NCBI RefSeq assembly: GCF_963676685.1
Contig: NC_092348.1
Location: 31,186,001-31,250,000, forward strand
Length of the DNA stretch: 64,000 bases
DNA from: Mytilus edulis
Taxonomy: Eukaryota
Direction: 5' to 3'
Shown: positions 1,374-37,527 of the stretch, in pieces
Numbering within the stretch: the stretch's first letter is position 1
How the letters are laid out: each line of letters opens with the position of its first letter
Translations under genes and position numbers: made by a program
Notes under the pieces: model-generated
Told to the model about the DNA's origin: nothing
Seen by the model: only the letters and a program-made list of their open reading frames with translations
Databases searched by the model: none

Positions 1374-1637
1374 ATGAGGATTTCCAATCTTTTAACTGCT
1401 ATAGTCTGTTTCTTTTTTTACATAACTTCTATCATGGCTCAATTAAATGTCGACATTTCTGGTGGCGGCGGCGGTGGCGGAGGAGGCGGTGGTGCTCCAG
1501 GCGGAAGAGGAGGAGATGTAATTACAAACATAAGAATCAATGGAGGGGGAAGATTCTTTCGTGGTGGAGGTAATAATCAAGGTGGAAAAGGAAAAGGAAA
1601 AGGACGTGGTAAAGGTAAAGGAAGAGGCTTTGGTTGA
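1374..1637 (+). CDS. Secreted Gly-rich cationic protein, paralog 1 (87 aa; one poly-Gly module; GK/GR tail)
   Basis: Signal-peptide-like N-terminus (..TSIMA|Q); module NVDIS-G11-AP-GGRGG-DVITNIRI shared with six paralogs; acceptor tttttttcag (AG 1361-1362) just before the ATG; AATAAA at 1706-1711 followed by a GT-rich tract. Confidence 0.9.
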   Translation: MRISNLLTAIVCFFFYITSIMAQLNVDISGGGGGGGGGGGAPGGRGGDVITNIRINGGGRFFRGGGNNQGGKGKGKGRGKGKGRGFG

Positions 1638-1897
1638 AAGCGACGAGGTCAGTCAAGATTAGAAATGACTTATTTTGTACTTTAAATGAATTCCTGTAGA
1701 AACTAAATAAAGTGCTCTATTGTTTTGTGGTTGCTTTGTGGTTAATTGACTGTTGTTTCGATTAGTTTTATTGTTAGGGGGTGTTTTAGTGCTTTTAGAC
1801 TGAATTCTTAGGCATTTATACACATTCATTGCGTTCGATCTTCTTTCAGTCTCTTTCTATCAAACGTCAGTATTCAATTGTGTTCTGTCTCGTTTAA

Positions 1898-2498
1898 TGG
1901 CATACAATACAGTTACAGCGGAGGTAATGACGTTGCTAACGTAAGTTGTTATTTTCGCGACATCATCTATGACTTATCGGGAAAATATTCAGTTTTCGAC
2001 TAATTTTTATCACTCAAACTTATTTAACTTGAAAACGAGTTCATGGACCCCTCTTTTTTAAAATGCCATTTGGTTTGTTTACGTAAGAAGATGGTGTGTG
2101 CCAATTTTCATCTAAAACGTAAATAGTGCAATTTTTTTAATTTTGATAAAAAAAATATATAGCAAAAAATATCGTTTTTTTCTCAATTCATGAACATTTG
2201 ATAAATATGAGTTATTTCTGAATAAAAAAATGCATAAATTTTTAGGATACTTACAACATACAGAAATTACATATTATTTAACAAAAAACAAATTGTGTTT
2301 ATCTTTTAAAACAAAAAAGTTACGTCTTTGTTTCGAAATGGATAATACGGCCACAAATCCGAATTTTGAGCAAATATACAAAATTTCGACCTCATTTTAC
2401 TCAAAAAGTAGCACATGAAGGTACATTTTTTATTACATATTTGATTTAATCAGGTAAAAAGTAAATGTAAATCAGGATCAAAACTGTATCGTATGCCC
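1898..2498. mobile_element. Non-autonomous TIR element with TTAA target duplication (Kolobok/piggyBac-type target)
   Basis: ttaa|tggcatacaatacagtt ... aactgtatcgtatgccc|ttaa. Confidence 0.7.
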
Positions 2499-3009
2499 TT
2501 AACTGATAATAACTATTGGTCGACTCGGGTCGGTACGGTAATATTGTTCCTTATATGCCGTAGTAAGTAGTTTCTCCTGTCCGGGTCATATACCTAATTT
2601 AAAATCTCATTGTACCCAATAGAACTTTAGCAAAATTATAAGGCAACCAATCAAAACCGTACATCTATATATCCATTTGGTGTGACGGCAAAGTACAGTA
2701 AATTGATCATCCGTTACGATAGACAAACACAGCTGATCTGCAATGTATACCAACTACTTGCTACGGTACATTATACACTGTGTCACAACCCTAGTTAAAT
2801 GCGTTACAAAATACAAGATGAACGAAAGCTATATAACAAACAAGAGACCATATGACACAGAAATTAACAACTATAGGTCACCGTACGTCCTTCAACAATA
2901 AGCCAAACCAATACCGCATAGTCGGATATAATTTAAAAGGCCCCGAAATGACAATGTAAAACAATTCAAACGAGAAAAATAACGGCCTAATCTATGTTGA
3001 TTATAACCT

Positions 3010-3200
3010 TGTTGTTCCAGTGGTCGTAATTAAGCCCTGTGTAAGCGGTGTTGCCCTTATGTTTCAGATGCAGGGGTTCGATTCTCACTAATAAAAGAAA
3101 AAAAATTGGCTAATTTAAAATTGTAGATCTAACATGACTTTGCTATTTTAAGACGAATTTTAAATACATTATGGTGTTTGTCCTGTATAATCACAGGACA
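3010..3200 (+). mobile_element. Possible decayed tRNA-derived SINE
   Basis: Pol III B-box-like GGTTCGATTC at about 3076-3085; no cloverleaf recognisable. Confidence 0.3.
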
Positions 3201-3349
3201 ACGTCTTTCGGAGATTGACAAAAAAGCAACAGTCTTTTTGTTCCTTGACGTTTTGAATCCAGGGACACTGACATAAATCTAAAGTGAAATAGAGTACTTT
3301 ATATTATTATGTTACATACTATGATCGCTCGTTTAACCCTGATATCATT

Positions 3350-3510
3350 TGGAATTCATTAAGTTTTGTCACTCTCCTAGTTTTGACATTAAAAAATGTG
3401 AACAGTTTAAATACATCATACTGAGGTACATAAACAATAAATGTTTCACTCATTTCACCATTAGATTATTTTAACTGAGGTGTCAACAATTTTAAGGTAT
3501 GTTTTACACA
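3350..3510 (+). promoter_or_regulatory. Putative core promoter and non-coding exon 1 of paralog 2
   Basis: Homologous to 175-340; TACATAAA at 3427-3434; donor AAG|GTATGT (GT 3497-3498). Confidence 0.55.
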
Positions 3511-4012
3511 TTTATGTATTGAAATGTATACACAAAAATTAACAATGAACATAATCCGTTTATTTTTCTAGATGAATTTAAATATAAATCAGTTCAATTA
3601 AATTGCTGGCCCTTTTTCTTATTAATGACACGCATTAGTAAAAAAAGGGGGAGTAGATAAAGAAGACACGTTTTGACCCAGCCAACTAGTACACACGAGT
3701 ACAAACCCGTGCGAGCGCAGCTTGAAGACTACTTGAAATTTGTAAGATGATACATGTTTGGCTTTAATATAAGCAGTGTTTGGATTTATAGTTTTAACGA
3801 TGATTTTGTGCATTGTTTGGACCTAAAAGCTTGAGTAAACTCTTGGCCATTACCTAGGATACAAAATAGTCTGTGACCAAGAGTTGCCCCAAAACCTTTG
3901 TGGACCTTTAGTAACGATCACAAATAAATTATGCTAAAAACTGTTTAGAATAATTAAAAATTAGACCCAAACTGAAACTACAACACAAAACTTACTCCTT
4001 TGGGTATACGTG

Positions 4013-4569
4013 AATGATAAAGCAACTCAACGACAAAATTAACATGTGCACAAAATCTGTTTTACACCGCCATATTTATATATTAAAATGAAGATAATTA
4101 TGTGGAATGATTATGCGTATACCTAGTCAGAAGTGGTTAACTTGTCATCAATGTGTTACATGTTTAATTGTTTCAAGCACAGACCCAACTGTTGGTGATA
4201 TCTTTTCAAATGTTTATATATTATGTTTCAGACTATTCCTTTTAATATTTGCTATATGGTATGGGCTTTGTGCGTTGTTGAAGGTCGTACCGTCAATGAT
4301 AAAGCAACTCAACGACAAAATTAACATGTGCACAAAATGTGTTTTACACCGCCATATTTATATATTAAAATGAAGACAATTATGTGGAATGAGTATACCT
4401 AGTCAAAAGTGGTTGACTTGTCATCAATGTGTTACATGTTTAATTGTTTCAAGCACAGACCCAACTGTTGGTGATATCTTTTCAAATGTTTATATATTAT
4501 GTTTCAGACTATTCCTTTTAATATTTGCTATATGGTATCGGCTTAGTGCGCTGTTGAAGGTCGTACCGT
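4013..4569. repeat. Tandem duplication of about 280 bp in the presumed intron of paralog 2
   Basis: aatgataaagcaactcaacgac.. starts at 4013 and 4295; copies nearly identical. Confidence 0.9.
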
Positions 4570-5399
4570 GATCTATTGTTATTTACATCCTCGTTAAGTG
4601 GTCTCCGGTGAATAGTTGAATGTTGGCAATTATACAAACATTGTTTTTAGAAAGAACATTTTAAGGGCAACATAGAGTCATAAACACTAAGTCAGACGTC
4701 TTTAATACAATTTGACTTTTTTACTATAAATTAAAATGTATTTCATAATATAGCATTACTTAAAAATGATTTTTTTTTATGTAATGTTCGTATGTTTGTT
4801 TATTCGATAATGTTCTACTATTTTGCAATGTTTTTGTATAGTGCGATATTGCAGCGGCTGGTCAAATTGTTAAACATAGTGTACAGTACTTCGGAATGAT
4901 CTAATTGTCCAAAACCTAAAAGACTCATAAACTATATACGTAGGAACTACTAAAAAGGGGGAAAAACCAAATTAAAGTGTAGTTTTTTAATGTTTAAATA
5001 GAAGGTAACCCTATTGAAAAGAATCCACATACAGCATTTAAGGACATAAACTTTAGACAGCTTATACTCATTTATATGCGCGGACTTACATATTGGGAGA
5101 ATGCAGAGCAGGAGACGCTTACCCTGTTGACGAATATGGTACTGTCTTTCTCATTGTGTTAATAATGCGATTCTCTAAATTTTTGTTTACTACCTTGATT
5201 TTTAATCTTTTATGACAATTTATGAGATTCTAACATCGGTAAGCAACTGCAACAGTATCTATCTGAACAAGTAATAAAATACAATAAGAATGCATGTACA
5301 TGTAGCATTGATTAAGACTAGCAGCTTAATTTATAGAAAATGATGAAATGTTTACTACTACTGCATCTTTTTATGTTATTTTTTTTTCAGTAAGCTAAG

Positions 5400-5729
5400 A
5401 TGAGGATTTCCAATCTTTTGATAGTTGCAATATGTATCATATTTTACATTACTTCTATCATGGCTCAATTTAATGTCGACATTACTGGTGGCGGCGGAGG
5501 AGGTGGGGGAGGCGGTGGCGGTCCAGGCGGAAGAGGAGGAGATATAATTACAAACATAAGAATAAACGGAGGTGGCAGATTCCTTCGTGGTGGAGGTAAT
5601 AATCAAGGCGGAAGAGGTAATCAAAGAGGGAATGGAAGAGGAAACGGAAGAGGAAATGGAAGAGGAATTAGTAGAGGAAATGGTAGAGGAAATGGACGTG
5701 GTAAAGGTAAAGGAAGAGGGAGAGGTTGA
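5400..5729 (+). CDS. Secreted Gly-rich cationic protein, paralog 2 (109 aa; one module; (GRGN)n tail)
   Basis: Closely similar to paralog 1 at protein and DNA level, with 22 extra codons of GRGN-type repeats; acceptor AG 5389-5390. Confidence 0.9.
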   Translation: MRISNLLIVAICIIFYITSIMAQFNVDITGGGGGGGGGGGGPGGRGGDIITNIRINGGGRFLRGGGNNQGGRGNQRGNGRGNGRGNGRGISRGNGRGNGRGKGKGRGRG

Positions 5730-6208
5730 AAGTAGTGAAGTCAACAATGAAAAGGTCACCCGTGTATGACTTTAAATTACAAAATTTTGATAAATTGGTG
5801 TAGATACTGATAAAGCTTTAAATTGTTTTTGTTGTTTTTTGTTGTGTTTTTTTGTACGGTTTCTTTTTTTTTTTTTTTTTTATTTGCTGTTGTTTTTTTT
5901 TTGGCACAGTTATTGCTTTCGATCTTCCAATCATATTCTGCCACGTTATGTAAGCGCTAAACGACATAATTTGACCGACATCAAAAGGACTGTTGATAGG
6001 TATTCGAAGATGTTCAGAAATTACGGATTTTATATTATTTTTTTAACTTGTAAGAAAACATTTTCATAAAAAAATCAAAGAAATAAAAATAATGTTCACT
6101 ACATTTTTGTGTACAACGATGTTTCATATTTTTAAACGGAACATTATCAGATTTGCAAAATTGTACGAAGTGGAATCACATCAAGTTGTTCTATATAATT
6201 CCGTTTTA

Positions 6209-7664
6209 CCGCAGTCCCCACTAGGCCACGATCGCACTACGGTCTGTGAAAAAAATGCAAAATTTGATGATCGTAGTACGATCGTGAAGATCGCAGTATG
6301 GTCGTATCACGGTCGTGGTGTGGTCTTCAAGATAGTGATGAGCGTGGCCAACTTTGAACATGTTTAAAACAATCGTGGTGCGATCACGGTGAAATAAGGT
6401 CGTAGGAGAAGCGTATTGAGAGCGCAATAAGATCGTAGTAAGATCGCAAAGGTCGCTGTACCGTCATAGCGAGAGCGTAGCGAAAGCGTGATTCTATTTG
6501 GAGAGACTGCGCTACGATCTCACAGCGACGTTATTACGACCTCACTACGACCATCACGCTTTCACCGCGACCCAACTACGCTTCCACTTTGACTATACCA
6601 CGCTGTTCACGACCATAGTACGATTCTAGCACGCCCTTGCCGTCCCCTTCTTACGACCTAACCACGTTTATACTACGACCATCATTCTCATTGTCATTTT
6701 CACATAAAATATATTAAATCTCTCCATGTTTTGTTTGTCGGTATGTAATTAGGACTTCTTGTCCATTTTCTCTAACGGCTAGACCATGCTTCTCGTTTTT
6801 ATATAGAATAGACCGTTGGTTTTCCCGTTTGAATGGTTTTACACTAATTTGTTGGGCCCTTTATAGCTTGCTGTTCGGTGTGAGCCAAGGCTCCGTGTTG
6901 AAGGCACGGTACCTTGCCCTTTAATGGTTTACTTTTATAAATTGTTACTTGGATAGAGAGTTGTCTCATTGGCACTCATACCACATCTTCCTATATCTAT
7001 TGACACATCTGTGTCATATCTGATATCGTTCATTAAAATATCGTCATTTGAGCATTATGGACCAGCAATAGGTTGTAATTTAGGTTGGATTGGTCGGTCC
7101 GACATCTCTACTTGATCAGAATTCGTTACTATCAGATCTCCCTCTGCATCTTCATCAACCCCTACCACCACGCCCACGTGTTCTAGTAAATTTTGGTGGC
7201 ATGACTGTATTGTTTCCGAGAAATCTACGTATTAATCAGAAATAGAAGGAATGGAACTCTATTGATTTGGAACACGTGGTTGGCGTTATTGCTGTGAACT
7301 TAGTAGAGATCGCGGTTCGAACTTAGTATAATTGTGGTAAGAAAGTGCTATAATCGCAGTAGAAGCGTGGTAAGATGATGTTGAGATCGTGTTGCAATTG
7401 TATAGCTCTTGGTGTGGTCGTAGTGACAACGTGATGAGCGTAGAAAGATCTTGATGAGCGTAGTGAGGTCGCAAAATAAGCGCGGTGAGAACGTGGTATA
7501 ATTGTAGCGGGATCGTTGTAGAAGCGTAATGAGGACGTAGCAGCATCGTGAAACGACAAAAAATAACAGTTTCATGCCGCTCATACCGCGACCTCACCAC
7601 GATCTGAATTTATTTTTCGATCGCGGTAAGCGTGGTGCGATCGTGGTTTAGTGTGACTGGGGCT
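6209..7664. mobile_element. Non-autonomous DNA transposon (Harbinger-like termini) with CGTAG/CACGA-rich subterminal repeats and a nested repeat at about 6800-7000
   Basis: TIRs cagtccccactaggccacgatcgcactacg / cgtggtgcgatcgtggtttagtgtgactg; TTA/TAA flanks; superfamily assignment tentative. Confidence 0.65.
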
Positions 7665-11019: not shown

Positions 11020-11225
11020 ATATAAAAAAGAAGATGTGGTATGACTGCCAATGAGACAACTCTTCACATGAGACCAAATGACAAAGAAATTACCAACTTT
11101 AGGTCACCATACGGCTTTCAACAATGAACAAAGCCCATACCGCATAGTAGTCAGCTATAAAAGGCCCCGAAATGACAAATGTAAATAAATTCAAACGAGA
11201 AAACTAATGGCCTAATTAATGTACA
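11020..11225. mobile_element. Representative of the most abundant interspersed repeat (aagatgtggtatg..gccaatgagacaact..ggccccga)
   Basis: Related copies near 2830, 6800, 19135, 27945, 29235, 36005, 38975, 51470, 54370, 55085, 59080, 60525, 61810 in both orientations, mostly sharing one fixed end. Confidence 0.75.
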
Positions 11226-11712
11226 AAAAGAATGCACGAAAACATGTTTAACCCCGTCACATTCTTTTTGTGCCTGTCCCAAGTCAGGAGTCTGTTATTC
11301 AATTATTATCATTGATTGTTGTCTCTCATATTTATTTTACGCTAATTCATTGTTCATAATTTCAGACCGTTAATTTTATGGTTTGAAATATTTTCACATT
11401 TTGTAATGTTTGGGCCTTTTTATAGCAGAATACTTGTGTCCAGTTTGGGTTTTATTCATTGTTGAAGGCTGTACTGTACGGTCACTTATTATCCTAGATT
11501 TTACGTCATTATGACTCTGCTGGATAGTAATCTTGGTGGCCATCATACCACGTTTTTTTTTATATATTAACATTAACATTTCAACTTTGCATTACAAAAC
11601 AACAAATAATTTGATGCATGCATGGTTCAAAATACACTTTTAGAATAAAAAAAAAACATAACCCCTCCTCAAAGTTAATAGTCCCTCATTTTGTTGTGTT
11701 GATATCATTAAA

Positions 11713-13457: not shown

Positions 13458-13889
13458 ATGAATTGTTCAATCATTATTGTGATAGCTTCAATATCTATTG
13501 TGTATTACCTCAACTCTGTTACTGCTCAAGTTAATGTCAACATTAATGGTGGCGGTGGTGGCGGCGGAGGTGGTGATCAAGCTCCAGGTGGAAGAGGTGG
13601 TGATATTAATACTAAGATTATCATAAAAGGAAGTGGTAGAGGAGGTTGGAAAGGAGGAAGACGAGGGGACAGAAGAGGAGGTGGAAGAGCCGTCCAAGGC
13701 AGATTAAATAATCAAGGTGGGAGACGGGGAAATCAAATCGGGGGCAGAGGGAGAGGACAGGTTAGAGGGAGAGGACAAGTTGTAGGGAGAGGACAACTTG
13801 GAGGAAGAAGACAACTAATAAGAGGTCTAAGAAGACAAGTTAGAAGATTACTGGGAAATCCTGTTGGGCCCAGGTTTAGACGATTTTAA
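13458..13889 (+). CDS. Secreted Gly/Arg-rich protein, paralog 3 (143 aa; one module; RGG and GRGQ repeats)
   Basis: Signal peptide (..NSVTA|Q); module NVNIN-G9-DQAP-GGRGG-DINTKIII; acceptor AG 13447-13448; AATAAA 13910-13915. Confidence 0.9.
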   Translation: MNCSIIIVIASISIVYYLNSVTAQVNVNINGGGGGGGGGDQAPGGRGGDINTKIIIKGSGRGGWKGGRRGDRRGGGRAVQGRLNNQGGRRGNQIGGRGRGQVRGRGQVVGRGQLGGRRQLIRGLRRQVRRLLGNPVGPRFRRF

Positions 13890-18254: not shown

Positions 18255-18683
18255 ATGAATGGTTCAATCATTATTGTGATAGCTTCAATATCTGTTGTAT
18301 TTAACCTCAATTCAGTAACTGCCCAAGTAAATGTCGACATAACTGGAGGCGGAGGCGGAGGCGGAGGCGGTGGTGGTGATCAAGCACCTGGTGGTAGAGG
18401 TGGCGATATTAATACAAAAATTATCATAAAAGGAGGTGGAAGAGGAGGTAAAAGAGGAGGTAGAAAAGGATTTCGAAAAGGAGGTAAAGGCAGATTAAAT
18501 AATAAAGGTAGAAGACGAGGAGGACAAAACATCGGGGGTAGAGGGAGAGGAAATTTTGAAGGAAGAGGACAAGTTCGAGGGAGAGGACAAGTTAGGGGAC
18601 GAGGACAAATTCGAGGACTAGGACGAGGCGGGGGTCAGTATAGAGGATCACTAGGATATGCTGGTGGATTTAGACGTTTTTAG
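18255..18683 (+). CDS. Secreted Gly/Arg-rich protein, paralog 4 (142 aa; one module)
   Basis: Paralog of 13458-13889 (similar signal peptide, DQAPGGRGGDINTKIII, C-terminal FRRF); acceptor AG 18244-18245; AATAAA 18703-18708. Confidence 0.9.
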   Translation: MNGSIIIVIASISVVFNLNSVTAQVNVDITGGGGGGGGGGGDQAPGGRGGDINTKIIIKGGGRGGKRGGRKGFRKGGKGRLNNKGRRRGGQNIGGRGRGNFEGRGQVRGRGQVRGRGQIRGLGRGGGQYRGSLGYAGGFRRF

Positions 18684-20651
18684 TTATTTAAATTTTAAAG
18701 GGAATAAAACTTCAAATATCATATGTTTTGTTTTTATGTCAGAGTTTTCCTTTTTTAATCGCAATACTGTGTTGCATTTAGTTAGAAACGCAGATTGTAG
18801 TAATTTAACTGTGTATACCTTACATGTTTTCTGTGAGTGACTAGATTTCTATATCATCTTCAAATATTGATTGATATGCGAAATTTAAATAATATGTAAA
18901 TAACGTGGGGATATAATGTATTAATTGCTGTAAATAGGATAGGCACCCTTATAACACTACCAGATCTTGTAAAAAGAGTGATGGATGTTTTAAAGTTTAA
19001 GCACTATGAAATCTTACGACTATATTTTGCTTGGCATCTTTTCTATTACAGGGTTTGCAGTAAACTTCGCAAAGGATTTGGTATTGCGTGCCTTACCCTT
19101 TCATGATAACCTCCGTGCAATATGTATTTTCATAGATATAGGTATGAGTGCCAATGAGACAAATCTCCATCCAAGTCACAATTTTAAAAAGTAAACCACT
19201 ATAGGGCAAGGTACGGTCTTCAACGCGGAGCCTAGGCTCACACCGAACAGCAATCTATATATATATAAAGGGTCCACAAAATTACTAGTGTAAAACCATT
19301 CAAACGGAAAAATCAACTGTCTAATCTATATAAAAAAACGAGACACAAGAAACACTTATGAACCACATAAACGACAACCACTGTACATATGTTTTACCAC
19401 ATCACTAGTTGTTGCATAAGATAAGAATTAACTGTTTGTCTCTCTTTGACTGATGTTTTTTTTTAATTTCCTATTTTGTATGAAAATGATTAATAATAGT
19501 AACTTGCATCCAGGTCAATTAGAGTACGATACAAGCTAGTGACAATCATCTCTATATTCTTTATATTACTTTATTAATATATGAATACAAGAAAACAAGT
19601 TGTTTATGTGCAATGTTTTTCTAAACGACCGTCAACCTCCATTTTTTTAAACTAATGGTCAGCTGAGTACTAAACGTTTTCGACCGATATATAAACAGCT
19701 GAATTACGTCATGATATTATTCTAAAGAAAATAGCAATTTATTATTATACTTGCAAAGGTTACAAGAGAAATATGATGTTTTTGAATTTAAAACATTTCC
19801 GATAAATCATTCGAAACTTAAATCTGGTTTTATTAAAATATTAATTACATTCAGTATCAACATGCTCCCGTTCTTAAAGTGCATGTAATATTCAACAACG
19901 GCCTTTACACTAACTTCGATCATTCAATCATAAAATTAAAAAAAAGTTTGGCAAAGTCGTGGGAATGCTTGGGCTATTTTAAGACCTTTAAGAGGTTCTG
20001 GATTTTCTCATTGTTCTACAGTTAATGTTTATATATCAGTCCTTTCAAGAACATCCTCAAAATTCCTTTACTACAACGTTGGTTGTTTTTATTTTTATTT
20101 ATTTGTTTGAATAAAAAAGACAAATGTGTGCGTCTCTCGTTTAAGGAAGATAAAGAACTACTTCGATAAAAAATAATAAGAAGGTATTGCTCTTATGAGA
20201 TTTTTATATTTCATACATTATGTTTTTGATATATCAAGTGGATTAGTCGATTGAAATCTATGAGCAAAAATTGTGGATGTTTCTTGATATGGATGAAACA
20301 GATGATATGAAATGGACATTTAAGCATGAAACATAATTACAAATTTCATGAATTTAGTTCTTTTTGTGGTTTTTCCTTTCTCTATTTACTTTGTCATTTA
20401 TCCTTTTAAATACCCATTGTGTTAACAAAGGACATCACCGCGGGGTTGCCGATGATCTCAATAGGTGGTTGACTTAGTTAACAGGTTAATACCTTTTTGA
20501 GCTTTCTGTGTCAATCGAAATATGGGAAGAGGTGTTACAGAAACTGACAACTTTCAGTGTATGCCGAAAAATAAAGAATGTGGTAGGCAATCGAAGAATT
20601 AATTTTGTCATTATTAAGGAAACAGATTATAGTATGAATGGTTCCACATGT

Positions 20652-26345: not shown

Positions 26346-26696
26346 ACTGGCACAAATGCTATGCAAGCCAAATCACACAAAAGTATGTGAAATTACATAC
26401 TGTATTTTTATAAAATCCCCTTTCTTTTCCAAATGTTAAAACGTTATAATCTACAAATTACAAAAAAAAACTGACAATGACTATGACAAATCATACGGAT
26501 TCTATGTAATGATTCAAAATTCATTTCAAGGGATATTATAAATGGTTATACAATTTTAAGAAAGGTGTTTCACCTCAGTCTATGTAATGCATGTATATTT
26601 TTTTAGTTAATTTTTATTTTTAATAGATTGTACGAAGCTACGACAAACTGAACTAATGAAAAACAGTCATAAAGGCCAAGTTTTACTCTATATACA

Positions 26697-27200
26697 ATGA
26701 AAGTTTCAAACTGTTTATTAACAATCCTTATCTTTTACAATTATTGTTCTGAGCTGACCTTTGGACAGAAAGGTCACAACAATGGTTTAAATTTGAATAT
26801 ATCTGGAGGAGGGGGTGGCGGAGGTGGCGGAATTGGTCCAGGAGGAGACGGCGGAAGCGTAATAACTAACCTGAATATCAAGAAAATAAAAAATGTTCGC
26901 AAGAATAAAGGCGACAGACAAAAGATTAAGTTAGCAAACGGGATAACTCTTGAAGGATTTAATTTGAATATCAATGGCGGTGGCGGTGGTGGCGGCGGTG
27001 GTTTGGGTGCAGGAGGCGATGGTGGAGACATTATCACTAATGTAAATGTGGGGAAGATGAAGAATGTTGATAAGGTAAAACCTTTGAAGAAAAAAAAAGA
27101 CAAAAAAGACAAAAAGAAAGACAAAAAAAAGAAAAAGAAAGACAAAAAAAGGAAAAAGAAAGACAGAAAAAAGAAAAAGAAAGACAAAAAAACAAAATAA
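26697..27200 (+). CDS. Secreted Gly-rich protein, paralog 5 (167 aa; two modules; poly-Lys/Asp tail)
   Basis: Signal-like N-terminus (..LTFG|Q); two modules 57 aa apart (poly-Gly runs start 26805 and 26976); 37-aa tail with 28 Lys; candidate acceptor AG 26625-26626. Confidence 0.88.
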   Translation: MKVSNCLLTILIFYNYCSELTFGQKGHNNGLNLNISGGGGGGGGGIGPGGDGGSVITNLNIKKIKNVRKNKGDRQKIKLANGITLEGFNLNINGGGGGGGGGLGAGGDGGDIITNVNVGKMKNVDKVKPLKKKKDKKDKKKDKKKKKKDKKRKKKDRKKKKKDKKTK

Positions 27201-27886: not shown

Positions 27887-30070
27887 TAAATACATGACCG
27901 GTTGAACTATATTTCTTTTTAGTATCGTAACCGTAAATATAAATACATAGATATAGGAAGATGTGGTGTGAGTGCCAATGAGACAACTCTCCATACAAAT
28001 AAAAATTTAAAAAGTAAACCATTATAGGTTAAAGTACGGCCTTCAACACATGTTCACAATAAGTTACAAAGATAATGATATGTAACAGTTGATGTCAACT
28101 GTTAAACAATTATACTACCTTATCACTGTCGGCCCAGGACTCTTGTTTCACTTCCTTCACATCGATGACACAATAATGTTATTTTTAATCTGAAAATACA
28201 TAATTTGTGCGATTTTTTTTCTATTGAATTAAGGAATATAACCGTAGCTTAGTCATGCAAAGATTTTATAAGCTCTTTATTTTTTTATTGAATAAGATTT
28301 TGATTATCAAATATATTGGCCTCGAGCATCACTGCAAACACACTATTTTTTAATGTTTTTCACCTCTCTGTGGAATTCAAAAACCGACAACTGCCGCTAT
28401 TATAAAAGAGAGGTGAAAATATCAAGGGTGCATTCAAACTCCCAAGTCGAAACTAAACTGACAAACGACATGGCTAAAGAAAACAACAAACAAACAAACA
28501 ACAATGCATGCACATAACAAAACATAGAAAACCAAATACTGTTTCACACGATCCCCAACAAAAACTGGTGCAGCGAAAAGGGTAAGTAGATACTGCTCCA
28601 CTTATGGCACTTGTTGTGCAGCTCATGTTAGTATTAAATTGGTACGTCAAATTCGGGGGAAAAGGGACTGGAGAGCCGTTACATAATTTACCCCTCAGAA
28701 GCGGGTGTTTATTGTTTCCGGATCGACAAACGGCATTATCACCCGTTGCTAATATTATCACATGCTGTTATGGATTGGCGGTGCTTCTGAAAAGTTAGTG
28801 AAGATTAACAAATGGCGCGTTTCAATAAAATGAATGGAAAATATATTGATATGCATAAAAAAAATATCTAGTTTACATTGGCTCAAATATCGATTTTGTC
28901 ATCAGCAAATCAAAACATAACTAAATTTGTATTCTTTTCAATCGGCATGTATAAAACACATTAACGTTTTTTTTATTCTATATAGAGGTTTACTCCTACT
29001 GCTTGTCTATATTTGTGGGGCCATTGTACAAGTCATAACTTCTTTTAAATTAACTGTCCTTGATTTTAAAGTACTAAATCCCTGGGATTTTTTTTAGTTT
29101 TAGTGTGATGTTACACTTTTGTTTCAGATAAGGGTGAAGGTTGAACGTGTTAGTGTGTAAAGCCGCTGCATTCGTTTGCACCTGTCCTAGGTCAGAAATC
29201 TGATGTTCAGTAGTTGTCGTTTGTTGATGAGATTCATAAACCCAAACCGCATAGTCAGCTATAAAAGGCCCTGTAATGACAGATGTTAAACGATTCAAAC
29301 AGAAGACTAACGGCCCGACTCGTGTACAAAACAATGTAAGAAAAACAAATTTGATTTACAGCAACAAACAACAACCTCTGAACTACAGGCTCCTGACATA
29401 GGACAGACGCATGCATGATGTGGGGTTAAACTAGTTTGCTAGCACCAAACTCTCACCTTAATAAGGGACAGCAGTAAAACATAAGAACAATTTACAAAAT
29501 TCAGTTTGAAAGAGCTTATCCTATCATATCGATATACAAAGAGGATAACATGGCAGCACATAAAACACCTTCCAAAATCGAGAGAGAGAGACAATAGGTA
29601 CAGATCTGAGAGTACTTGCAGTCAGCTAGTCAAAATTCAAAAACAAAGAATTAATTAAGACTCTTTCAAAATTAAGTACTGTTATTAGTTAAAGTGAATA
29701 GCAAGAGAGACCATTCCTAGGGAAAAGACATATGTTTTGCAATATAAATTTACAGTTCAATTAAGGATGAATTTCTTTATTTAAGTTTTATTTATAATTT
29801 AATGAAAGGGTGAATTATACACTAAAATACACTAATCCTCAAAAATTTGTATTCGTTTTTGTTTAATTCTTAATTTCTTTTTAAAAAATACTTACGACAA
29901 TTCTATTCTTATACAAAGACTTCACCATTATACACGCGAAGTTATGTAAATGTTGTAATGTTACAAAAAGTCAGTTCAAAGTTAATGCCAATTAAACAAT
30001 TATTTTTATTGTGCACAATTGATATTGTTCCTCCCTTGTTCGTTCACCATTGGATTATGATTTGTTACTT

Positions 30071-31544
30071 CTTATAACAGGGATGATGTCTGAGGGTGAA
30101 TGAGTCTTGTAACAGGGATGATGTCTGAGGGCGAATGAGTCTTATAACAGGGATGATGTCTGAGGGTGAATGAGTCTTATAACAGGGATGATGTCTGAGG
30201 GTGAATGAGTCTTATAACAGGGATGATGTCTGAGGGCGAATGAGTCTGATAACAGGGATGATGTCTGAGGGTGAATGAGTCTTATAACAGGGATGATGTC
30301 TGAGGGCGAATGAGTCTTATAACAGGGATGATGTCTGAGGGTGAATGAGTCTTATAACAGGGATGATGTCTGAGGGCGAATGAGTCTGATAACAGGGATG
30401 ATGTCTGAGGGTGAATGAGTCTTATAACAGGGATGATGTCTGAGGGCGAATGAGTCTTATAACAGGGATGATGTCTGAGGGTGAATGAGTCTTGTAACAG
30501 GGATGATGTCTGAGGGCGAATGAGTCTTATAACAGGGATGATGTCTGAGGGTGAATGAGTCTTATAACAGGGATGATGTCTGAGGGTGAATGAGTCTTGT
30601 AACAGGGATGATGTCTGAGGGCGAATGAGTCTTATAACAGGGATGATGTCTGAGGGCGAATGAGTCTTATAACAGGGATGATGTCTGAGGGCGAATGAGT
30701 CTTATAACAGGGATGATGTCTGAGGGCGAATGAGTCTTATAACAGGGATGATGTCTGAGGGCGAATGAGTCTTATAACAGGGATGATGTCTGAGGGCGAA
30801 TGAGTCTTATAACAGGGATGATGTCTGAGGGCGAATGAGTCTTATAACAGGGATGATGTCTGAGGGCGAATGAGTCTTATAACAGGGATGATGTCTGAGG
30901 GCGAATGAGTCTTATAACAGGGATGATGTCTGAGGGCGAATGAGTCTTATAACAGGGATGATGTCTGAGGGCGAATGAGTCTTATAACAGGGATGATGTC
31001 TGAGGGCGAATGAGTCTTATAACAGGGATGATGTCTGAGGGCGAATGAGTCTTATAACAGGGATGATGTCTGAGGGCGAATGAGTCTTATAACAGGGATG
31101 ATGTCTGAGGGCGAATGAGTCTTATAACAGGGATGATGTCTGAGGGCGAATGAGTCTTATAACAGGGATGATGTCTGAGGGTGAATGAGTCTTATAACAG
31201 GGATGATGTCTGAGGGCGAATGAGTCTTGTAACAGGGATGATGTCTGAGGGCGAATGAGTCTTAAAACAGGGATGATGTCTGAGGGCGAATGAGTCTTAT
31301 AACAGGGATGATGTCTGAGGGCGAATGAGTCTTATAACAGGGATGATGTCTGAGGATGAATGAGTCTTGTAACAGGGATGATGTCTGAGGGCGAATGAGT
31401 CTTAAAACAGGGATGATGTCTGAGGGCGAATGAGTCTTATAACAGGGATGATGTCTGAGGGCGAATGAGTCTTATAACAGGGATGATGTCTGAGGATGAA
31501 TGAGTCTTGTAACAGGGATGATGTCTGAGGGTGAATGAGTCTTG
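30071..31544. repeat. Minisatellite, 42 x 35 bp (CTTATAACAGGGATGATGTCTGAGGGYGAATGAGT)
   Basis: 30071-31540 = 1470 bp = 42 units, with no spacers. Confidence 0.97.
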
Positions 31545-33115: not shown

Positions 33116-33868
33116 ATGAATATTATCGGGGTGATTTTGGTACTTGGCATTTTTAACAAATGTGCATGCCATGGCTACTATGGAGATAATTATTACAGAG
33201 GATACGGAGAACTTCCATTGCATAGACCGCAATCAAACGGAAGAGATTGGGAAAAACTATTCAAAAATTTGAAAGCACGTGTTAGTAATTTAGAAAAGGT
33301 TCACCGTAATAATACGGATGGAAACATCAATATTGATATTAAAGGAGGCGGGGGTGGTGGTGGAGGCGGAATCGAACCAGGAGGAAATGGTGGAAATCTA
33401 ACAACTCATTTATTTATTAAGAAAATCAAAACGGTTCATACTAAGGATGGAACAAAAGTCATAATAAAGCCCGGTGATGGGCGAACATTACAAGTGCTTA
33501 AATTAATGATCAAAGGAGAAGGCGGCGGGGGAGGAGGCGGAATGGGTAAGGGTGGCGACGGAGGAAGTATATTTACAAACTTGACAATCAAAACATTTAA
33601 GACTGTATTTAGAGATGGAATAAATGTCACTACTGCTGAGGTTATAAATCCACTAGAAGGGCTCGGTTTGAACATTAAAGGTGGTGGCGGAGGTGGAGGT
33701 GGCGGCACAGGCCCTGGTGGCAACGGCGGCGACTTGGTTACAGCTATTGTCATAGAGAATGTAAAGGATGTAACTATAAACGGAACTTGGACAAAAGAAG
33801 ATAGGAAGGCATGGAAATTAATAAAGAAGTTACGGAGACAAAAGAATAAACAAAATGGAAAAAAATAG
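33116..33868 (+). CDS. Secreted Gly-rich protein, paralog 6 (250 aa; three modules; basic tail)
   Basis: The track start at 33071 is a TTG inside a polypyrimidine tract; acceptor AG 33095-33096 is followed by ATG 33116 (MNIIGVILVLGIFNKCAC|H signal); modules start 33344, 33515, 33680. Confidence 0.88.
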   Translation: MNIIGVILVLGIFNKCACHGYYGDNYYRGYGELPLHRPQSNGRDWEKLFKNLKARVSNLEKVHRNNTDGNINIDIKGGGGGGGGGIEPGGNGGNLTTHLFIKKIKTVHTKDGTKVIIKPGDGRTLQVLKLMIKGEGGGGGGGMGKGGDGGSIFTNLTIKTFKTVFRDGINVTTAEVINPLEGLGLNIKGGGGGGGGGTGPGGNGGDLVTAIVIENVKDVTINGTWTKEDRKAWKLIKKLRRQKNKQNGKK

Positions 33869-35147
33869 GACCTAATGAGTCTAGCTCTTTCCTTGAATTT
33901 TAATATTTCAATGGTTGTGGAGATAAATGATTGAACACTCTCCTATGGTTGAGGAAAGTTGAGTGATAAAAAAATTTGTTAACTCATATATCGATTCTTT
34001 ATGATTCTTGTTAAATTATATCTTTACTAACAATTGAAGCAAAAGCATGAATTGTTTTTTTTTAAACTGCATCATTGATTTGCGACTTACATATTAATGC
34101 AGTTGTTTTTAAAAGAGTTCAGGAAATTATCTTTTCTTTATTATTATTTTCTTATTATCATACACCCATCAACAAATGGAAATATTGCTGGAGTTCAGTT
34201 CGTCCGAAACGCTTTTTCTCATTCAAAACTAAAAACTCCTTAAGCCCAGGAGAACCTAATACCGACATAACAATTTAAATGTAGACATAATGAAACCCAC
34301 CAAAACTCATCGAGATCTCAGCTGCTTTGGAATGGTCGATAGATATTGCTCAAAATCTCATGTTTCACCTAGAAAAAGTCATTACAGATACTTGGCTTAT
34401 CAATTGCTACGCCAGACATGTGTTTCATCTTCATAAGACTCAGCAATGGTACAAACAGTTTGAATGCAAAATAAAATACGAAGTTGAAAAACATAAAAAC
34501 ATGTGCCAAATACGGCCAATGCAATTAATTCATAAGGGTAGAAAACATTAGTGTTTAAAACAATATCCTGTAATATCAACAGTTAAATGTAAAAAAAAAT
34601 ATTTTTAAAATACCGAACTCCGAGGAAAATTCCAAATGGGAAGTTCGTTATCGAATGGCAAAATCAAAAGCTCAAACACATCAAACGAATGGATAACAAC
34701 TGAGACATACATGACTTGGTACAGACAATTTCTTGAAAACCTGGTTTTATAGCTAACTAAACCTCTCACTTGTATGACAGTCGCATACAATTCCATTATA
34801 TTCACAACGATGTGTTAACAAAACAAACAGACGTAATACATGTAATATATAAAAATGTCAAAAAAACGACAAATTAGCAGAACATTAACATATCAATGGT
34901 AAGTACAAAATCTCTGATATTCTCAAGCGAGGATGTTACAATTAAAGAAAAAACGGACGAAATAGTGATAAACAACAATCGGAACATGTCAGTATTTATC
35001 TTTGACATAACATGTTATAACGATCAACTTACTTTTGATGGTGTACGTAAAACTGTCCAGACTTGTTGAAAGGAAGTAGTGCGGGATTAAACTTTGCAAA
35101 AAACTGCTGATTAACAAAATCAATTGAAGTCTTCGATTTGTTTTGTT

Positions 35148-35208
35148 CGATTACAGTGTTCATATGACGAAGCTTCGGATAGAAACCATTCGCGAATTGT
35201 TACGTATA
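35148..35208 (-). pseudogene. Decayed SLC7-paralog exon fragment (YVTIREWFLSEASSYEHCNR)
   Basis: Ungapped 44/61 nt match by hand to 45295-45355 ([20 protein letters not shown]); T-rich tract upstream on the - strand but no clear AG. Confidence 0.6.
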
Positions 35209-35659
35209 AAAATAAAAAAAAAAATAAAAAATACCCCTTAAAATTTGTAATTTTTCACAGACCTTTCCTTATAACTCTGTCTTTTTTCTTTATCAAATAC
35301 TGCTGTCTCTAAGCTGGCGTCTATTGTTTATAAGACAATTTTATCTCTACACAATTCTCCTGTTTCCCATATCACTTCATACCATTTATTGTATAGAAGA
35401 GTTTTTGGAATAATGTATGCTATGCTCACCGATTGATTATTTTTGCTCTATGTATTTGTCTTTGGGGAACCAGATATGAAAAACTTTCTGATAAAAATGC
35501 AATCGAAATACACAATTATACCGTCTTTCTTTATTATTTGTGGTGAAAGATCAATCATCGAATATGTTTAACAATTAATGTTGAACTCCTTTTTATGAAT
35601 TATGCAACCAGTTGATAGATGGCATTATAATATTGCAAAAAATATAAACATCAGGTCAT

Positions 35660-35860
35660 TGCTCTAAAATAAAGTGCATGAAGTTCCTTTGTAACTTATA
35701 GCCTTAACTTTTAGTTTTAAAGTAAACACGGATACACTTTTTGACCATGTATTTAAAGATATTTATAACAAACATTCTGTTGTTCTTGATGGGAAAAAAC
35801 CTAAGCAGGTAAGTTAGACCTCTCTGAAACAATATCAAGGTAAATTTGCTAATTAATAAA
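35660..35860 (+). promoter_or_regulatory. Putative promoter and non-coding exon 1 of paralog 7
   Basis: Homologous to 31950-32170; donor CAG|GTAAGT (GT 35809-35810) followed by the shared ctctgaaacaat. Confidence 0.45.
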
Positions 35861-36720
35861 ATGCATAGAAATAAATATTGTCAACTGTGCTCAAAGATAC
35901 GTTATTACAGATAATTGATTTTTCTATCCTGTAAAACCGGTTTTTTTCTGTTAATTTTCGGAATCGTATATGATATAATACATTTAATATACATAATTTG
36001 TTTTCCGTCAGCTATCAAGGGCCCCGATATGACAATGTAAAACAATTCAAACGAGAAAACTAACGGCCTTATTTATCTAAAAATATGAACGAAAAACAAA
36101 TATTTAACACATAAACAAACGACAACCACTGAATTACAGGCTCCTAATTTGGGACAGGCACATACATAAATAATGTGGCGGGGTTAAACATGTTAGCATG
36201 TTAAAATTGTTTTCATATCTTTAGCATACACAACTCGAATGTTATTGGGATAACTCACAAATTCAATTGTCCTATGGAACAGCGAAAATGTTTTGTATAA
36301 AAGCGCAAATGGCATTTAAAACGCGCAAACGTGACGCGTCGAGATTTGACCACTTGGTTGCTTCAATATGTTTAATAATCAAACAATATCGCCATTATCA
36401 TTTTACCCAATTTTCAAAAGAGTACAAAGTTAACGTAGTAATCTTTAAGATTTTTTTTTTAAAGGGTAATAATATCGGGATGAAAATTAACTACTATTTT
36501 TATATTACATGTGGTGAAAATATGCGATTAAAAACCAAAGGGACATAATAAAATATCATAGATCGCAAATAATCCGCTAATACCATAACAATAAATAAAA
36601 TTTAAAAAATGGGTTAAAATATATTTGTCCATCTTTTTATAATTATTAATAAACATTTAAAAACAAATCAAGGTTTTTAAAGCATTAATTTAGTTCTTTT
36701 CTATTCTTTTTCCAGGAAAG

Positions 36721-37527
36721 ATGAACATCTCAATAATTTACATCAGTTTGATTTTTAATCTTGTCATTTATGACAATTGTTTGGGCCATAGATCCTATGG
36801 AGAAAATTATCGCAGAAGACACGGACGATTATCAAGACAAAGACCACGTTCAAGTACTTTTGGCAGACGATTTGTGAAAAAAAACATACAAAAAGGTCTA
36901 CCGTTGAAAGATCCCGAAATAATTGCTAGCACTACTGATCAGGTAGCACTTTCTAATGTTGACAGAAATATCAATATGAATTTAACAGGAGGCGGAGGTG
37001 GTGGCGGTGGAGGAATCGATCCAGGCGGAAATGGTGGAAATCTTTCTACTAATTTATTTATCAATAAAATCAAGACAATTCACACTAGTGACGGAACAAT
37101 AATCAAAGTTAAACCTGGTGATGGTCGAACATTGGAAGCACTTAAATTGATCATTGACGGAGGAGGTGGCGGGGGAGGAGGAGGAATAGGAAAAGGCGGT
37201 GATGGAGGAAGTATATTTACAACCTTGACAATCAACAAATTAAAGACTGTTTTTAGAAATGGAGCAAATGCAACTTTTGCTGAAGTTCAAAACCCTCTCC
37301 GTGGACTCAGTTTGGAGATTAATGGCGGTGGTGGAGGTGGCGGAGGTGGACCAGGCCAAGGAGGCGATGGTGGCGATTTGGTTACAAATGTTGTCATTGG
37401 AAAAGCTAAAATAGTCACGAAAATTGGCGCTAGAAGAAGAAAAAAGAAAAAGGATCGGAAATTAAAAAGGATGTTGAAGAGGAAAAGGAAGAACAGAGAC
37501 AAGTTTAAGCCATTGCTTAATTACTAG
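36721..37527 (+). CDS. Secreted Gly-rich protein, paralog 7 (268 aa; three modules; Lys/Arg tail)
   Basis: Collinear with paralog 6 (e.g. KPGDGRTL, GKGGDGGSIFT); modules start 36988, 37159, 37324; acceptor AG 36714-36715; AATAAA 37599-37604. Confidence 0.9.
   Translation: MNISIIYISLIFNLVIYDNCLGHRSYGENYRRRHGRLSRQRPRSSTFGRRFVKKNIQKGLPLKDPEIIASTTDQVALSNVDRNINMNLTGGGGGGGGGIDPGGNGGNLSTNLFINKIKTIHTSDGTIIKVKPGDGRTLEALKLIIDGGGGGGGGGIGKGGDGGSIFTTLTINKLKTVFRNGANATFAEVQNPLRGLSLEINGGGGGGGGGPGQGGDGGDLVTNVVIGKAKIVTKIGARRRKKKKDRKLKRMLKRKRKNRDKFKPLLNY

What the first reader, a model, noticed from the sequence alone, without database searches (positions are those of the whole stretch)
1374..37527. Cluster of seven secreted poly-glycine-module proteins: a candidate undescribed family
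Seen: seven same-strand ORFs, each with a signal-peptide-like start, a splice acceptor a short distance before the ATG, 1-3 copies of one conserved module (12 in total) and a strongly basic tail. The mature parts have no Cys. They fall into recent pairs (1/2, 3/4, 6/7) plus paralog 5. All frames stay intact although the flanks are full of decayed repeats, which implies selection. Established: known mussel foot proteins are mostly Tyr/DOPA-rich, and myticalins are Pro/Arg-rich; neither has this strand-G9-GGxGG-strand unit as far as I recall. Inference: a lineage-specific secreted system, either structural (byssus, periostracum, ligament, mucus or larval shell matrix) or a cationic defence family. 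Low-complexity masking would hide it from standard annotation.
Basis: partly seen in the sequence, partly recalled or inferred. Interest (0 to 1): 0.92.

Follow-up and report, generated by a model that had tools for sequence, protein, structure and literature searches.

The report
Mussel-only secreted nine-glycine module proteins
Seven neighbouring mussel genes encode secreted, very positively charged proteins built from a conserved unit with exactly nine glycines; the family occurs only in Mytilus, is kept by selection, may fold like springtail antifreeze proteins, and has no known function.

Summary
Seven intact + strand ORFs (1374-37527) carry 12 copies of one ~40-residue module: strand, nine Gly, 3-4 residue connector, GGxGG, strand. 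Each has a signal-peptide-like start, no Cys after it, and pI 10-12. An eighth paralog survives only as a tail relic (40291-40413).

The family is real and under selection. dN/dS in the module core is 0.04-0.25 at dS 0.3-0.9. Gly runs use mixed codons. 67 of 71 modules in Mytilus homologues have exactly nine Gly.

It is genus-restricted. A profile search of 1.84 billion representative proteins found only Mytilus relatives. Pfam and PDB sequence searches found nothing real. This genome has no copy outside the cluster.

It is only partly hidden from annotation. Orthologues of genes 4-8 are in NCBI as hypothetical or misnamed proteins. Genes 1/2 have no counterpart.

The pairs are not recent (74-84% nucleotide identity).

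One moderate-confidence AlphaFold model (gene 7) puts the six Gly segments in a polyproline-II bundle that superposes on snow-flea antifreeze protein (Z 9.0, 1.6 A). A two-module paralog model did not reproduce this.

Function is unproven. I favour binding of anionic surfaces. Digestive-gland expression is only a lead. Earlier scan notes cover this same stretch only.

The parts
1374..1637 (+). Gene 1: 87-aa secreted precursor with one module (1437-1562; Gly run of 11) and a Gly/Lys/Arg tail
   Evidence: ORF; module; composition pI 12, net +9, no Cys in the mature part; acceptor ...ttttcag 11 nt before the ATG
175..332 (+). Candidate promoter and non-coding exon 1 of gene 1, ending at a conserved AAG|GTATGT donor (intron would start at 333). 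Inferred, not shown by RNA
   Evidence: 76-84% conserved block shared with 3351-3545 upstream of gene 2, TATA-like element about 80 nt before the donor; donor motif occurs only twice in the window, 0.03 expected
3351..3496 (+). Candidate promoter and non-coding exon 1 of gene 2 (donor GT at 3497). Inferred
5400..5729 (+). Gene 2: 109-aa precursor with one module (5463-5579; Gly run of 12) and a tail made of a 12-bp repeat x7 (GRGN units, 5610-5696)
   Evidence: no homologue in any database
13458..13889 (+). Gene 3: 143-aa precursor with one module (13524-13649; nine Gly + DQAP + GGRGG) and an Arg/Gly/Gln tail ending RRF
   Evidence: 68% identical to an M. trossulus protein
18255..18683 (+). 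Gene 4: 142-aa precursor with one module (18321-18452; Gly run of 11); the tail contains a 36-bp repeat
   Evidence: 82% identical to M. trossulus P0008
26697..27200 (+). Gene 5: 167-aa precursor with two modules (26781-26903, 26952-27074) and a poly-Lys/Asp tail from a 21-bp repeat x5 (27087-27192)
   Evidence: orthologue P0033 at 90% identity; candidate acceptor AG at 26625-26626
33116..33868 (+). Gene 6: 250-aa precursor with a variable N-terminal region, three modules (33320-33442, 33497-33613, 33656-33778) and a basic tail
   Evidence: orthologues P0005 (M. galloprovincialis VDI21652) and P0006 (M. californianus)
36721..37527 (+). Gene 7: 268-aa precursor with three modules (36964-37086, 37135-37257, 37300-37422) and an Arg/Lys tail predicted helical; this is the protein that was modelled
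   Evidence: the exact protein is in NCBI (P0009), with orthologues in four Mytilus species; acceptor ...tttccag 5 nt before the ATG
40291..40413 (+). Relic of an eighth paralog: only the last ~40 codons of the basic tail plus the stop codon remain, preceded by in-frame stops. The full gene (287 aa, P0007 type) exists in other Mytilus genomes next to gene 7
   Evidence: tblastn 85% identity to P0007 residues 248-287; own-genome search; translation; the M. californianus model P0003 fuses the gene 7 and gene 8 orthologues

Best explanation
This is a genuine tandem gene family, found only in Mytilus and kept by selection. Each gene probably has a short non-coding first exon and one coding exon, and encodes a secreted, Cys-free, strongly cationic protein.

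Each protein has three parts:
(i) A signal peptide.
(ii) One to three copies of a ~40-residue module: an alternating hydrophobic strand, exactly nine Gly, a 3-4 residue connector, GGxGG, and a second strand.
(iii) A fast-evolving basic tail generated by short DNA tandem repeats.

I infer that the module is a folded scaffold, not a floppy linker. In this reading the nine-Gly run (three turns) and the GGxGG segment adopt polyglycine-II/polyproline-II helices that pack side by side, held by the flanking beta-strands. Three modules would give a six-helix bundle like that of springtail antifreeze proteins.

I further infer that the cationic tail and surface tether the protein to polyanionic extracellular targets such as microbial envelopes, ingested particles or mucus. 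That suggests a mucosal, digestive or defence role rather than a cross-linked structural material.

Shown: the genes, the modules, the selection and the taxonomic restriction.
Inferred: the fold (one model), secretion, the splicing pattern and the function.
For: Genes and modules.

Selection:
- Overall dN/dS is 0.27-0.41 (Fisher p from 9e-4 to 5e-8).
- Module core dN/dS is 0.18, 0.04 and 0.25 in the three pairs. The N-terminal region of genes 6/7 is about neutral (0.89) and the tails of genes 1-4 are 0.36-0.48.
- Invariant Gly columns have dS 0.5-0.7, and all 12 runs use mixed GGN codons, so Gly is kept at the protein level and not by slippage.
- 67 of 71 modules in 33 database homologues have exactly nine Gly, and run plus connector equals 12 residues in 68 of 71. 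Variants are substitutions, not length changes.

Taxonomic restriction. There is no copy elsewhere in the 1.37-Gb genome.

Fold:
- The AlphaFold2 model of gene 7 has core pLDDT 63-82, with the Gly runs as confident as the strands.
- An all-against-48,161-chain structural search gives snow-flea AFP 2pne_A at Z 9.0, rmsd 1.6 A, 66 of 81 residues, and springtail AFP 7jjv at Z 6.9. The next unrelated hit is Z 3.3, and a second look gave 7jjv_A at Z 6.5.
- Pure-Gly central helices of 6-7 residues are documented in the phage S16 gp38 PGII domain (review PMC8409303).

Charge and composition: pI 10-12, net +9 to +32, no Cys, Tyr 0-2%. Tails arise from 12-, 21- and 36-bp repeats.

Expression lead:
- A 1,021-bp 'Glycine-rich protein' contig is the third most expressed gene of M. 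galloprovincialis digestive gland (PMC4203926).
- Separate public assemblies encoding the gene 6 orthologue give contigs of exactly 1,021 nt.
Against: - The fold rests on one model with mean pLDDT 57.6 and an 8-sequence alignment. The other four models scored 40-50.
- The two-module paralog model was poor (pLDDT 51.7) and gave no PPII match.
- Foldseek found nothing significant.
- The tool notes that a best Z of 7-8 is common for orphan models, and AlphaFold may reproduce a remembered Gly-rich fold.
- A homotrimer test of a single-module protein gave no answer.
- The digestive-gland link is a coincidence of contig length only; the paper's supplement holds no sequence.
- No binding or antimicrobial activity is shown.
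Confidence: 0.5

Rival explanations
1. The proteins are intrinsically disordered, low-complexity secreted polycations, for example coacervate or mucus components. In this reading the Gly run is a flexible spacer and there is no defined fold; the model's PPII bundle is an AlphaFold artefact.
For: Four of five gene 7 models have pLDDT 40-50. The gene 5 model has pLDDT 51.7 with the Gly runs under 50. ESMFold gave pLDDT under 50 for the single-module fragment. RGG/GRG-type tails resemble phase-separating sequences.
Against: A spacer would tolerate length change, yet 67 of 71 modules keep exactly nine Gly and variants are substitutions. Module dN/dS is 0.04-0.25, far below the neighbouring regions. 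The flanking strands have conserved alternating hydrophobic patterns.
Confidence: 0.2
2. The proteins are structural or adhesive matrix proteins of an extracellular material such as byssus, periostracum, ligament or larval or adult shell matrix, comparable to shematrins, KRMPs or thread matrix proteins.
For: They are secreted, Gly-rich, have a basic C-terminus and form a tandem family. Shematrins and KRMPs combine Gly-rich repeats with basic ends (PMC3896809).
Against: There are no GnY repeats, Tyr is 0-2%, and there is no Cys and almost no His, so the usual DOPA, disulfide or metal cross-linking chemistry is missing. There is no sequence similarity to any described matrix protein. If the lead holds, it points to digestive gland rather than mantle or foot.
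Confidence: 0.15
3. The proteins are ice-binding (antifreeze or recrystallisation-inhibiting) proteins of freeze-tolerant intertidal mussels, using a flat PPII bundle like Collembola antifreeze proteins.
For: The only strong structural matches are the two springtail antifreeze proteins. Ice-active macromolecules were reported in M. edulis in 1976 and remain unidentified, and osmolytes do not fully explain M. trossulus freeze tolerance (bioRxiv 10.1101/2021.08.30.458284).
Against: The match follows from the Gly segments alone. There is no Ala-rich flat face (Ala 0-3%), no disulfides, and a very high positive charge untypical of AFPs. The family is also present in the warm-temperate M. galloprovincialis and M. 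californianus. A shared fold does not show a shared function.
Confidence: 0.08
4. The ORFs are non-functional open frames, either decaying duplicates or chance ORFs over GGN microsatellites.
For: One paralog is visibly degraded (40291-40413). Genes 1/2 have no database counterpart. No expression data were obtained.
Against: Seven frames remain intact at dS 0.4-0.7. dN/dS is significantly below 1. Mixed Gly codons rule out simple microsatellites. Orthologues are conserved in four other Mytilus species. Splice signals are conserved.
Confidence: 0.03

Closest known systems
Collembola (snow flea / springtail) antifreeze proteins, PDB 2PNE/3BOG and 7JJV
   Same: In the gene 7 model, six Gly-rich segments of about three PPII turns pack as an antiparallel two-layer bundle (Z 9.0, rmsd 1.6 A over 66 of 81 residues; Z 6.9 and 6.5 for 7JJV). 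Both are secreted, Gly-rich and taxonomically restricted.
   Different: There is no detectable sequence homology. The mussel segments are pure Gly runs rather than GXX triplets, and they are separated by long beta-strand segments absent from sfAFP. There are no disulfides and no Ala-rich ice-binding face, and the mussel proteins carry strongly basic tails. Ice binding is untested.
Polyglycine-II domains of the phage S16 gp38 adhesin and of the ALK/LTK glycine-rich domain (Pfam Gly_rich PF12810, Gly_rich_2 PF21722)
   Same: Runs of 6-7 consecutive Gly form the central PGII helices in gp38 (PMC8409303). Strand, Gly run, GGxGG, strand is a similar local pattern, and the PGII lattice serves as a rigid scaffold next to beta structure.
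   Different: The structural match to gp38 is weak (6f45_D, Z 2.6), and ALK does not appear among the matches. Pfam Gly_rich_2 scores only E 0.95-3.6, far below its cut-off, for 2 of 7 proteins, and none of the single modules scores at all.
Glycine-rich cationic antimicrobial proteins of arthropods (e.g. hyastatin Gly-rich region, Spgly-AMP, type II crustin Gly regions)
   Same: They are secreted, cationic, Gly-rich, and often belong to multigene, lineage-specific families (PMC11767717).
   Different: Those are defined by composition, mostly with Cys-containing domains, and have no conserved nine-Gly/GGxGG module. No sequence similarity was found, and no activity data exist for the mussel family.
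Myticalins (Mytilus linear Cys-free cationic AMPs)
   Same: They are found only in Mytilus, are secreted, Cys-free in the mature part and cationic, and form a multigene family with presence/absence variation (PMC5577615, PMC12294457).
   Different: Myticalins are short Pro/Arg-rich peptides released from a precursor. This family has 6-25 kDa Gly-module proteins, and searches do not link the two.
Shematrins / KRMPs (bivalve shell matrix)
   Same: They combine Gly-rich regions with a basic C-terminal end, are secreted and form a tandem family (PMC3896809).
   Different: Their defining GnY repeats and RKKKY-type ends are absent, and Tyr is 0-2%. There is no sequence match.
RTX calcium-binding nonapeptide GGxGxDxUx (from my own knowledge of the motif)
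   Same: In 5 of the 12 modules the GGxGG segment plus the next four residues fits the nonapeptide exactly (e.g. GGRGGDVIT).
   Different: There is one copy per module rather than a tandem array. The Asp is Ser or Asn in five modules. There is no Pfam HemolysinCabind hit. Calcium binding is untested.

Membership tests
Collembola PPII-bundle antifreeze proteins | Bundle of 6-13 antiparallel Gly-rich PPII helices | tested here: inconclusive
   The gene 7 model matches 2pne_A at Z 9.0 / 1.6 A and 7jjv at Z 6.5-6.9. This is one moderate-confidence model only, and the gene 5 model did not reproduce it.
Collembola PPII-bundle antifreeze proteins | Sequence homology / GXX tripeptide periodicity | tested here: not met
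   The profile against all PDB sequences returns only scFv Gly-Ser linkers, no AFP. The exhaustive search finds no arthropod protein. The runs are pure Gly, not GXX.
Collembola PPII-bundle antifreeze proteins | Disulfide bonds and an Ala-rich, uncharged flat ice-binding face | tested here: not met
   The mature proteins have no Cys, Ala 0-3% and net charge +9 to +32.
Collembola PPII-bundle antifreeze proteins | Ice-binding activity | not testable with these tools
   Needs thermal hysteresis or ice-affinity assays.
Pfam Gly_rich_2 (PF21722) / ALK-type glycine-rich domain | Score above the curated Pfam cut-off | tested here: not met
   The best score is 9.9 bits (E 0.95) against a cut-off of 24.3, in 2 of 7 proteins. 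None of 10 isolated modules scores.
Shematrin / KRMP shell matrix proteins | Gly-Tyr (GnY) repeat domains and an RKKKY-type C-terminal signature | tested here: not met
   The mature proteins have 0-5 Tyr each and no GnY repeats. The defining features are taken from PMC3896809.
Mussel foot (DOPA adhesive) proteins | High Tyr/DOPA content | tested here: not met
   Tyr is 0-2%.
Myticalins | Short Pro/Arg-rich mature peptide in a processed precursor; sequence similarity | tested here: not met
   The composition is Gly/Lys/Arg/Asn, not Pro-rich. No myticalin appears among the hits.
RTX beta-roll proteins | Tandem array of GGxGxDxUx nonapeptides | tested here: not met
   There is a single nonapeptide-like segment per module, with Asp replaced in five of 12, and no HemolysinCabind hit.
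Glycine-rich cationic antimicrobial proteins (compositional class) | Secreted, cationic, Gly-rich | tested here: met
   Signal-like N-termini, Gly 21-47%, pI 10-12. This is a class defined by composition, not by homology.
Glycine-rich cationic antimicrobial proteins (compositional class) | Antimicrobial activity, or induction by infection | not testable with these tools

The most novel reading that the evidence does not exclude
The module is a new way of building a polyglycine-II helix bundle, with pure nine-Gly helices clamped between beta-strands. The family would be the long-sought ice-active protein fraction of freeze-tolerant intertidal mussels, convergent with springtail antifreeze proteins.
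Probability: 0.08. Interest if true: 0.9.

Novelty: new variant of a known kind. Interest (0 to 1): 0.6.

Why it matters
Folded glycine-rich polyproline-II bundles are a rare structural class. The review read here describes only a handful of independent families: springtail antifreeze proteins, the Obg N-domain, phage gp38 and the acetophenone carboxylase family. An animal family in which a run of exactly nine glycines is conserved by selection across paralogs, alleles and species would be a clean natural test case. It could show how homopolymeric glycine can be structural, and it would be a compact module for protein design.

For mussel biology, the cluster adds a Mytilus-only family of secreted proteins with presence/absence variation. 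It may be very highly expressed in digestive gland. It gives concrete candidates for three open questions: mucosal or gut defence, particle handling, and the unidentified ice-active proteins of Mytilus.

It also corrects misleading database names such as cabeza-like, fibrillarin-like and IcsA autotransporter-like.

Tried and rejected
Expression and splice junctions are therefore untested.
- Pfam on whole proteins and on 10 isolated modules gave nothing above noise.
- The PDB sequence profile returned only artificial (G4S)n linkers of scFv constructs after a KLEIK-like strand, which is spurious.
- Foldseek against the PDB gave no hit with E <= 0.001.
- The ESM Atlas gave no usable hit for gene 7 or gene 4.
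- The one non-Mytilus hit of the exhaustive search (P0034, E 3.8e-4) is a bacterial protein with unrelated repeats containing a short Gly run. I rejected it as compositional.
- Complex prediction on three copies of the gene 4 module region gave 'no answer'. This is evidence neither for nor against self-association.
- The own-genome DNA pattern for nine GGN codons plus GGNGG was swamped by microsatellites and poly-G, with forward counts equal to the reversed control.
- The second AlphaFold job (gene 5) was too uncertain to use.
- Periostracin (very Gly- and Tyr-rich, from memory) was considered and rejected because Tyr is nearly absent.
- Sperm nuclear basic proteins were rejected because of the signal peptides.
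- Literature searches by accession numbers and by keywords found no description of this family.
- The supplement of PMC4203926 does not hold the sequence of its 'Glycine-rich protein'.

Full report
WHAT IS THERE

The window carries seven intact ORFs on the + strand:
- 1374-1637 (87 aa)
- 5400-5729 (109 aa)
- 13458-13889 (143 aa)
- 18255-18683 (142 aa)
- 26697-27200 (167 aa)
- 33116-33868 (250 aa)
- 36721-37527 (268 aa)

A search for eight consecutive GGN codons gives 40 matches against 0 expected by shuffling. All fall inside these ORFs apart from a homopolymer at 48-79. The window has no N.

Parsing the translations gives 12 modules, distributed 1+1+1+1+2+3+3. Each module has:
- an alternating hydrophobic strand (xNxN/DIx);
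- a Gly run;
- a connector of 3 residues (genes 5-7) or 4 residues (genes 1-4);
- GGxGG;
- a second strand ((D/N/S)xxTNxxI).

Every protein begins with a hydrophobic, signal-peptide-like segment with small residues at -3/-1. This was judged by eye, because no predictor was available. The only Cys residues lie in that segment. The predicted mature parts have pI 10.0-12.0, net charge +9 to +32, Gly 21-47% and Tyr 0-2%.

The basic tails differ between paralog groups and are made by short DNA tandem repeats:
- 12 bp x7 in gene 2
- 36 bp x2 in gene 4
- 21 bp x5 in gene 5

GENE STRUCTURE (inferred; no RNA data)

Six genes have a pyrimidine tract plus AG 5-19 nt before the ATG. Gene 5 has one about 70 nt upstream.

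About 1.0 kb upstream of gene 1 and 1.9 kb upstream of gene 2 lies a conserved block. It ends in the same AAG|GTATGT donor, and in gene 1 a TATA-like element sits about 80 nt before it. That donor motif occurs only at these two places in the window, where 0.03 are expected by chance. A short non-coding first exon plus a single coding exon is therefore likely.

The database models of the orthologues match the single coding ORFs in length.

EXTENT OF THE FAMILY

Protein searches of the whole 1.37-Gb assembly with genes 4 and 7 and with the eighth-paralog protein return only this cluster. Nothing lies to the left of the window.

An eighth paralog (287 aa, P0007 type) sits next to gene 7 in other Mytilus genomes: an M. 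californianus gene model fuses the two. Here it is reduced to its last ~40 codons at 40291-40413, preceded by stop codons. That is consistent with presence/absence variation.

SELECTION

The paralog pairs 1/2, 3/4 and 6/7 are real but old. DNA similarity is 84%, 74% and 75%, and it stops about 50-130 nt outside the coding exon. dS is 0.41, 0.51 and 0.74.

Overall dN/dS is 0.32, 0.27 and 0.41, all significantly below 1 (Fisher p 9e-4, 2e-7, 5e-8).

By region:
- The module core is the most constrained in the g1/g2 and g3/g4 pairs (0.18 and 0.04); in g6/g7 it is 0.25, above only the tail estimate noted below.
- The N-terminal region of genes 6/7 is about neutral (0.89).
- The tails of genes 1-4 are intermediate (0.36-0.48).
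- The gene 6/7 tail gives 0.18 on a saturated dS (2.99), so that value is unreliable.

Columns where both paralogs keep Gly have dS 0.5-0.7, and all 12 runs use a mixture of GGT, GGC, GGA and GGG. The runs are therefore maintained at the protein level rather than homogenised as microsatellites.

In 33 database homologues (four other Mytilus species and many allelic variants), 67 of 71 modules have exactly nine Gly. Run plus connector is 12 residues in 68 of 71, and the exceptions are mostly substitutions rather than length changes. A homopolymer with a fixed length is hard to reconcile with a flexible linker.

TAXONOMIC DISTRIBUTION AND ANNOTATION STATUS

Word-indexed searches of 5.8 billion clustered proteins found only Mytilus proteins for gene 7 (M. 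galloprovincialis, M. trossulus, M. californianus, M. edulis) and one M. trossulus protein for gene 3. They found nothing for gene 2.

An exhaustive HMMER profile search of 1.84 billion representatives returned three Mytilus relatives and one spurious bacterial repeat protein.

The database entries carry hypothetical or misleading automatic names: 'RNA-binding protein cabeza-like', 'fibrillarin-like', 'IcsA autotransporter-like' and 'regulator of gene activity-like'. They include VDI21650-VDI21652 and XP_076109314.

The family is thus not invisible to annotation, but it is uncharacterised. Genes 1/2 are unannotated anywhere. I found no paper describing it.

FOLD

Pfam gives nothing, either for whole proteins or for single modules. 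A PDB sequence profile search hits only synthetic Gly-Ser linkers.

AlphaFold2 on gene 7 with an 8-sequence alignment gave mean pLDDT 57.6:
- N-terminal 85 residues disordered;
- a core (83-236) at 63-82 for most 10-residue blocks, dipping to 50 in the linker at 181-190;
- the Gly runs as confident as the strands;
- a helical basic tail.

Foldseek found no significant match. An alignment-based search of 48,161 representative PDB chains gave:
- snow-flea antifreeze protein 2pne_A at Z 9.0, rmsd 1.6 A, 66 of 81 residues aligned, model range 89-220;
- springtail antifreeze protein 7jjv_B at Z 6.9;
- the next, unrelated hit at Z 3.3.

A second-look alignment gave 7jjv_A at Z 6.5.

In the model the six Gly segments (three nine-Gly runs and three GGxGG) therefore form a two-layer PPII bundle. 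Nine residues is three PPII turns. Pure-Gly helices are what the fully buried positions of polyglycine-II lattices require, as in phage S16 gp38 (PMC8409303).

Caveats:
- This is one model, and the other four scored 40-50.
- The two-module gene 5 model (pLDDT 51.7) did not reproduce the bundle.
- The tool warns that a best Z of 7-8 is common for orphan models.
- I could not inspect coordinates.

I put the PPII-bundle reading at about 50%.

FUNCTION

Nothing here measures function.
- The lack of Tyr, Cys and His argues against a cross-linked material of the byssus, periostracum or shematrin type.
- The extreme positive charge, reached by different repeats in each paralog group, argues that binding polyanions is the selected property of the tails.
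- A Mytilus-only tandem cluster with copy loss resembles the mussel defence families such as myticalins, without homology to them.

One lead concerns expression. Gerdol et al. 2014 list an undescribed 'Glycine-rich protein', contig length 1,021 bp, as the third most expressed gene of M. galloprovincialis digestive gland, at 3.27 times actin (PMC4203926). At least two distinct public assemblies encoding the gene 6 orthologue give contigs of exactly 1,021 nt. Identity with the published contig is unproven, because the paper's supplement holds no sequence.

The antifreeze resemblance is structural only. There is no Ala-rich face and no disulfides, and the family also occurs in warm-temperate species. 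It does, however, touch a real open question about unidentified ice-active proteins in Mytilus.

TOOLS THAT WERE NOT AVAILABLE

VERDICT

This is a genuine, Mytilus-only, uncharacterised family of secreted polycationic proteins. Its module has a length-invariant nine-Gly run under strong purifying selection. The module plausibly forms a polyglycine-II/PPII bundle, which would make it a new variant of a rare fold class. Function remains to be shown.

Noticed in passing
window 30070-31543: A 35-bp minisatellite, 42 copies at 97% identity and G-rich on the + strand (GC skew 0.44 in this 2-kb bin), lies between genes 5 and 6, about 1.6 kb upstream of gene 6.
   Followed up: partly
window 40291-40413: A truncated relic of an eighth family member (tail only). 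The full gene is present in M. galloprovincialis and M. californianus, suggesting presence/absence variation at this locus.
   Followed up: partly
window 1437-1562 and the other modules: GGxGG plus the next four residues fits the RTX calcium-binding nonapeptide GGxGxDxUx exactly in 5 of 12 modules, and the Gly run is also nine residues long. No Pfam support was found, and calcium binding is untested.
   Followed up: partly
window 2840-2997, 11066-11222, 55154-55305 (and 6791-6982 / 19141-19343; 36007-36197 / 29254-29439 / 11241-11429): Several families of short interspersed repeats (about 150-200 bp, 72-84% identity, both orientations) are scattered between the genes. These are probably SINE/MITE-like elements.
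   Followed up: no
window 4009-4569: A 276-bp unit is duplicated in tandem (95% identity) upstream of gene 2, between its candidate exon 1 and the coding exon.
   Followed up: no
window 47111-47485 (- strand): A 124-aa ORF made of a tandemly repeated peptide unit of about 29 aa (…[24 protein letters not shown]…). It is probably a translated satellite and was not examined.
   Followed up: no
window 62700-63119 (- strand): A 139-aa ORF rich in basic residues. It may be a fragment of a mobile-element or other gene and was not examined.
   Followed up: no
proteins P0003, P0004 (other Mytilus genomes): Public gene models fuse neighbouring family members (gene 7 + gene 8 orthologues) or join halves of two paralogs. 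Automatic names such as cabeza-like, fibrillarin-like and IcsA-like are compositional artefacts.
   Followed up: partly
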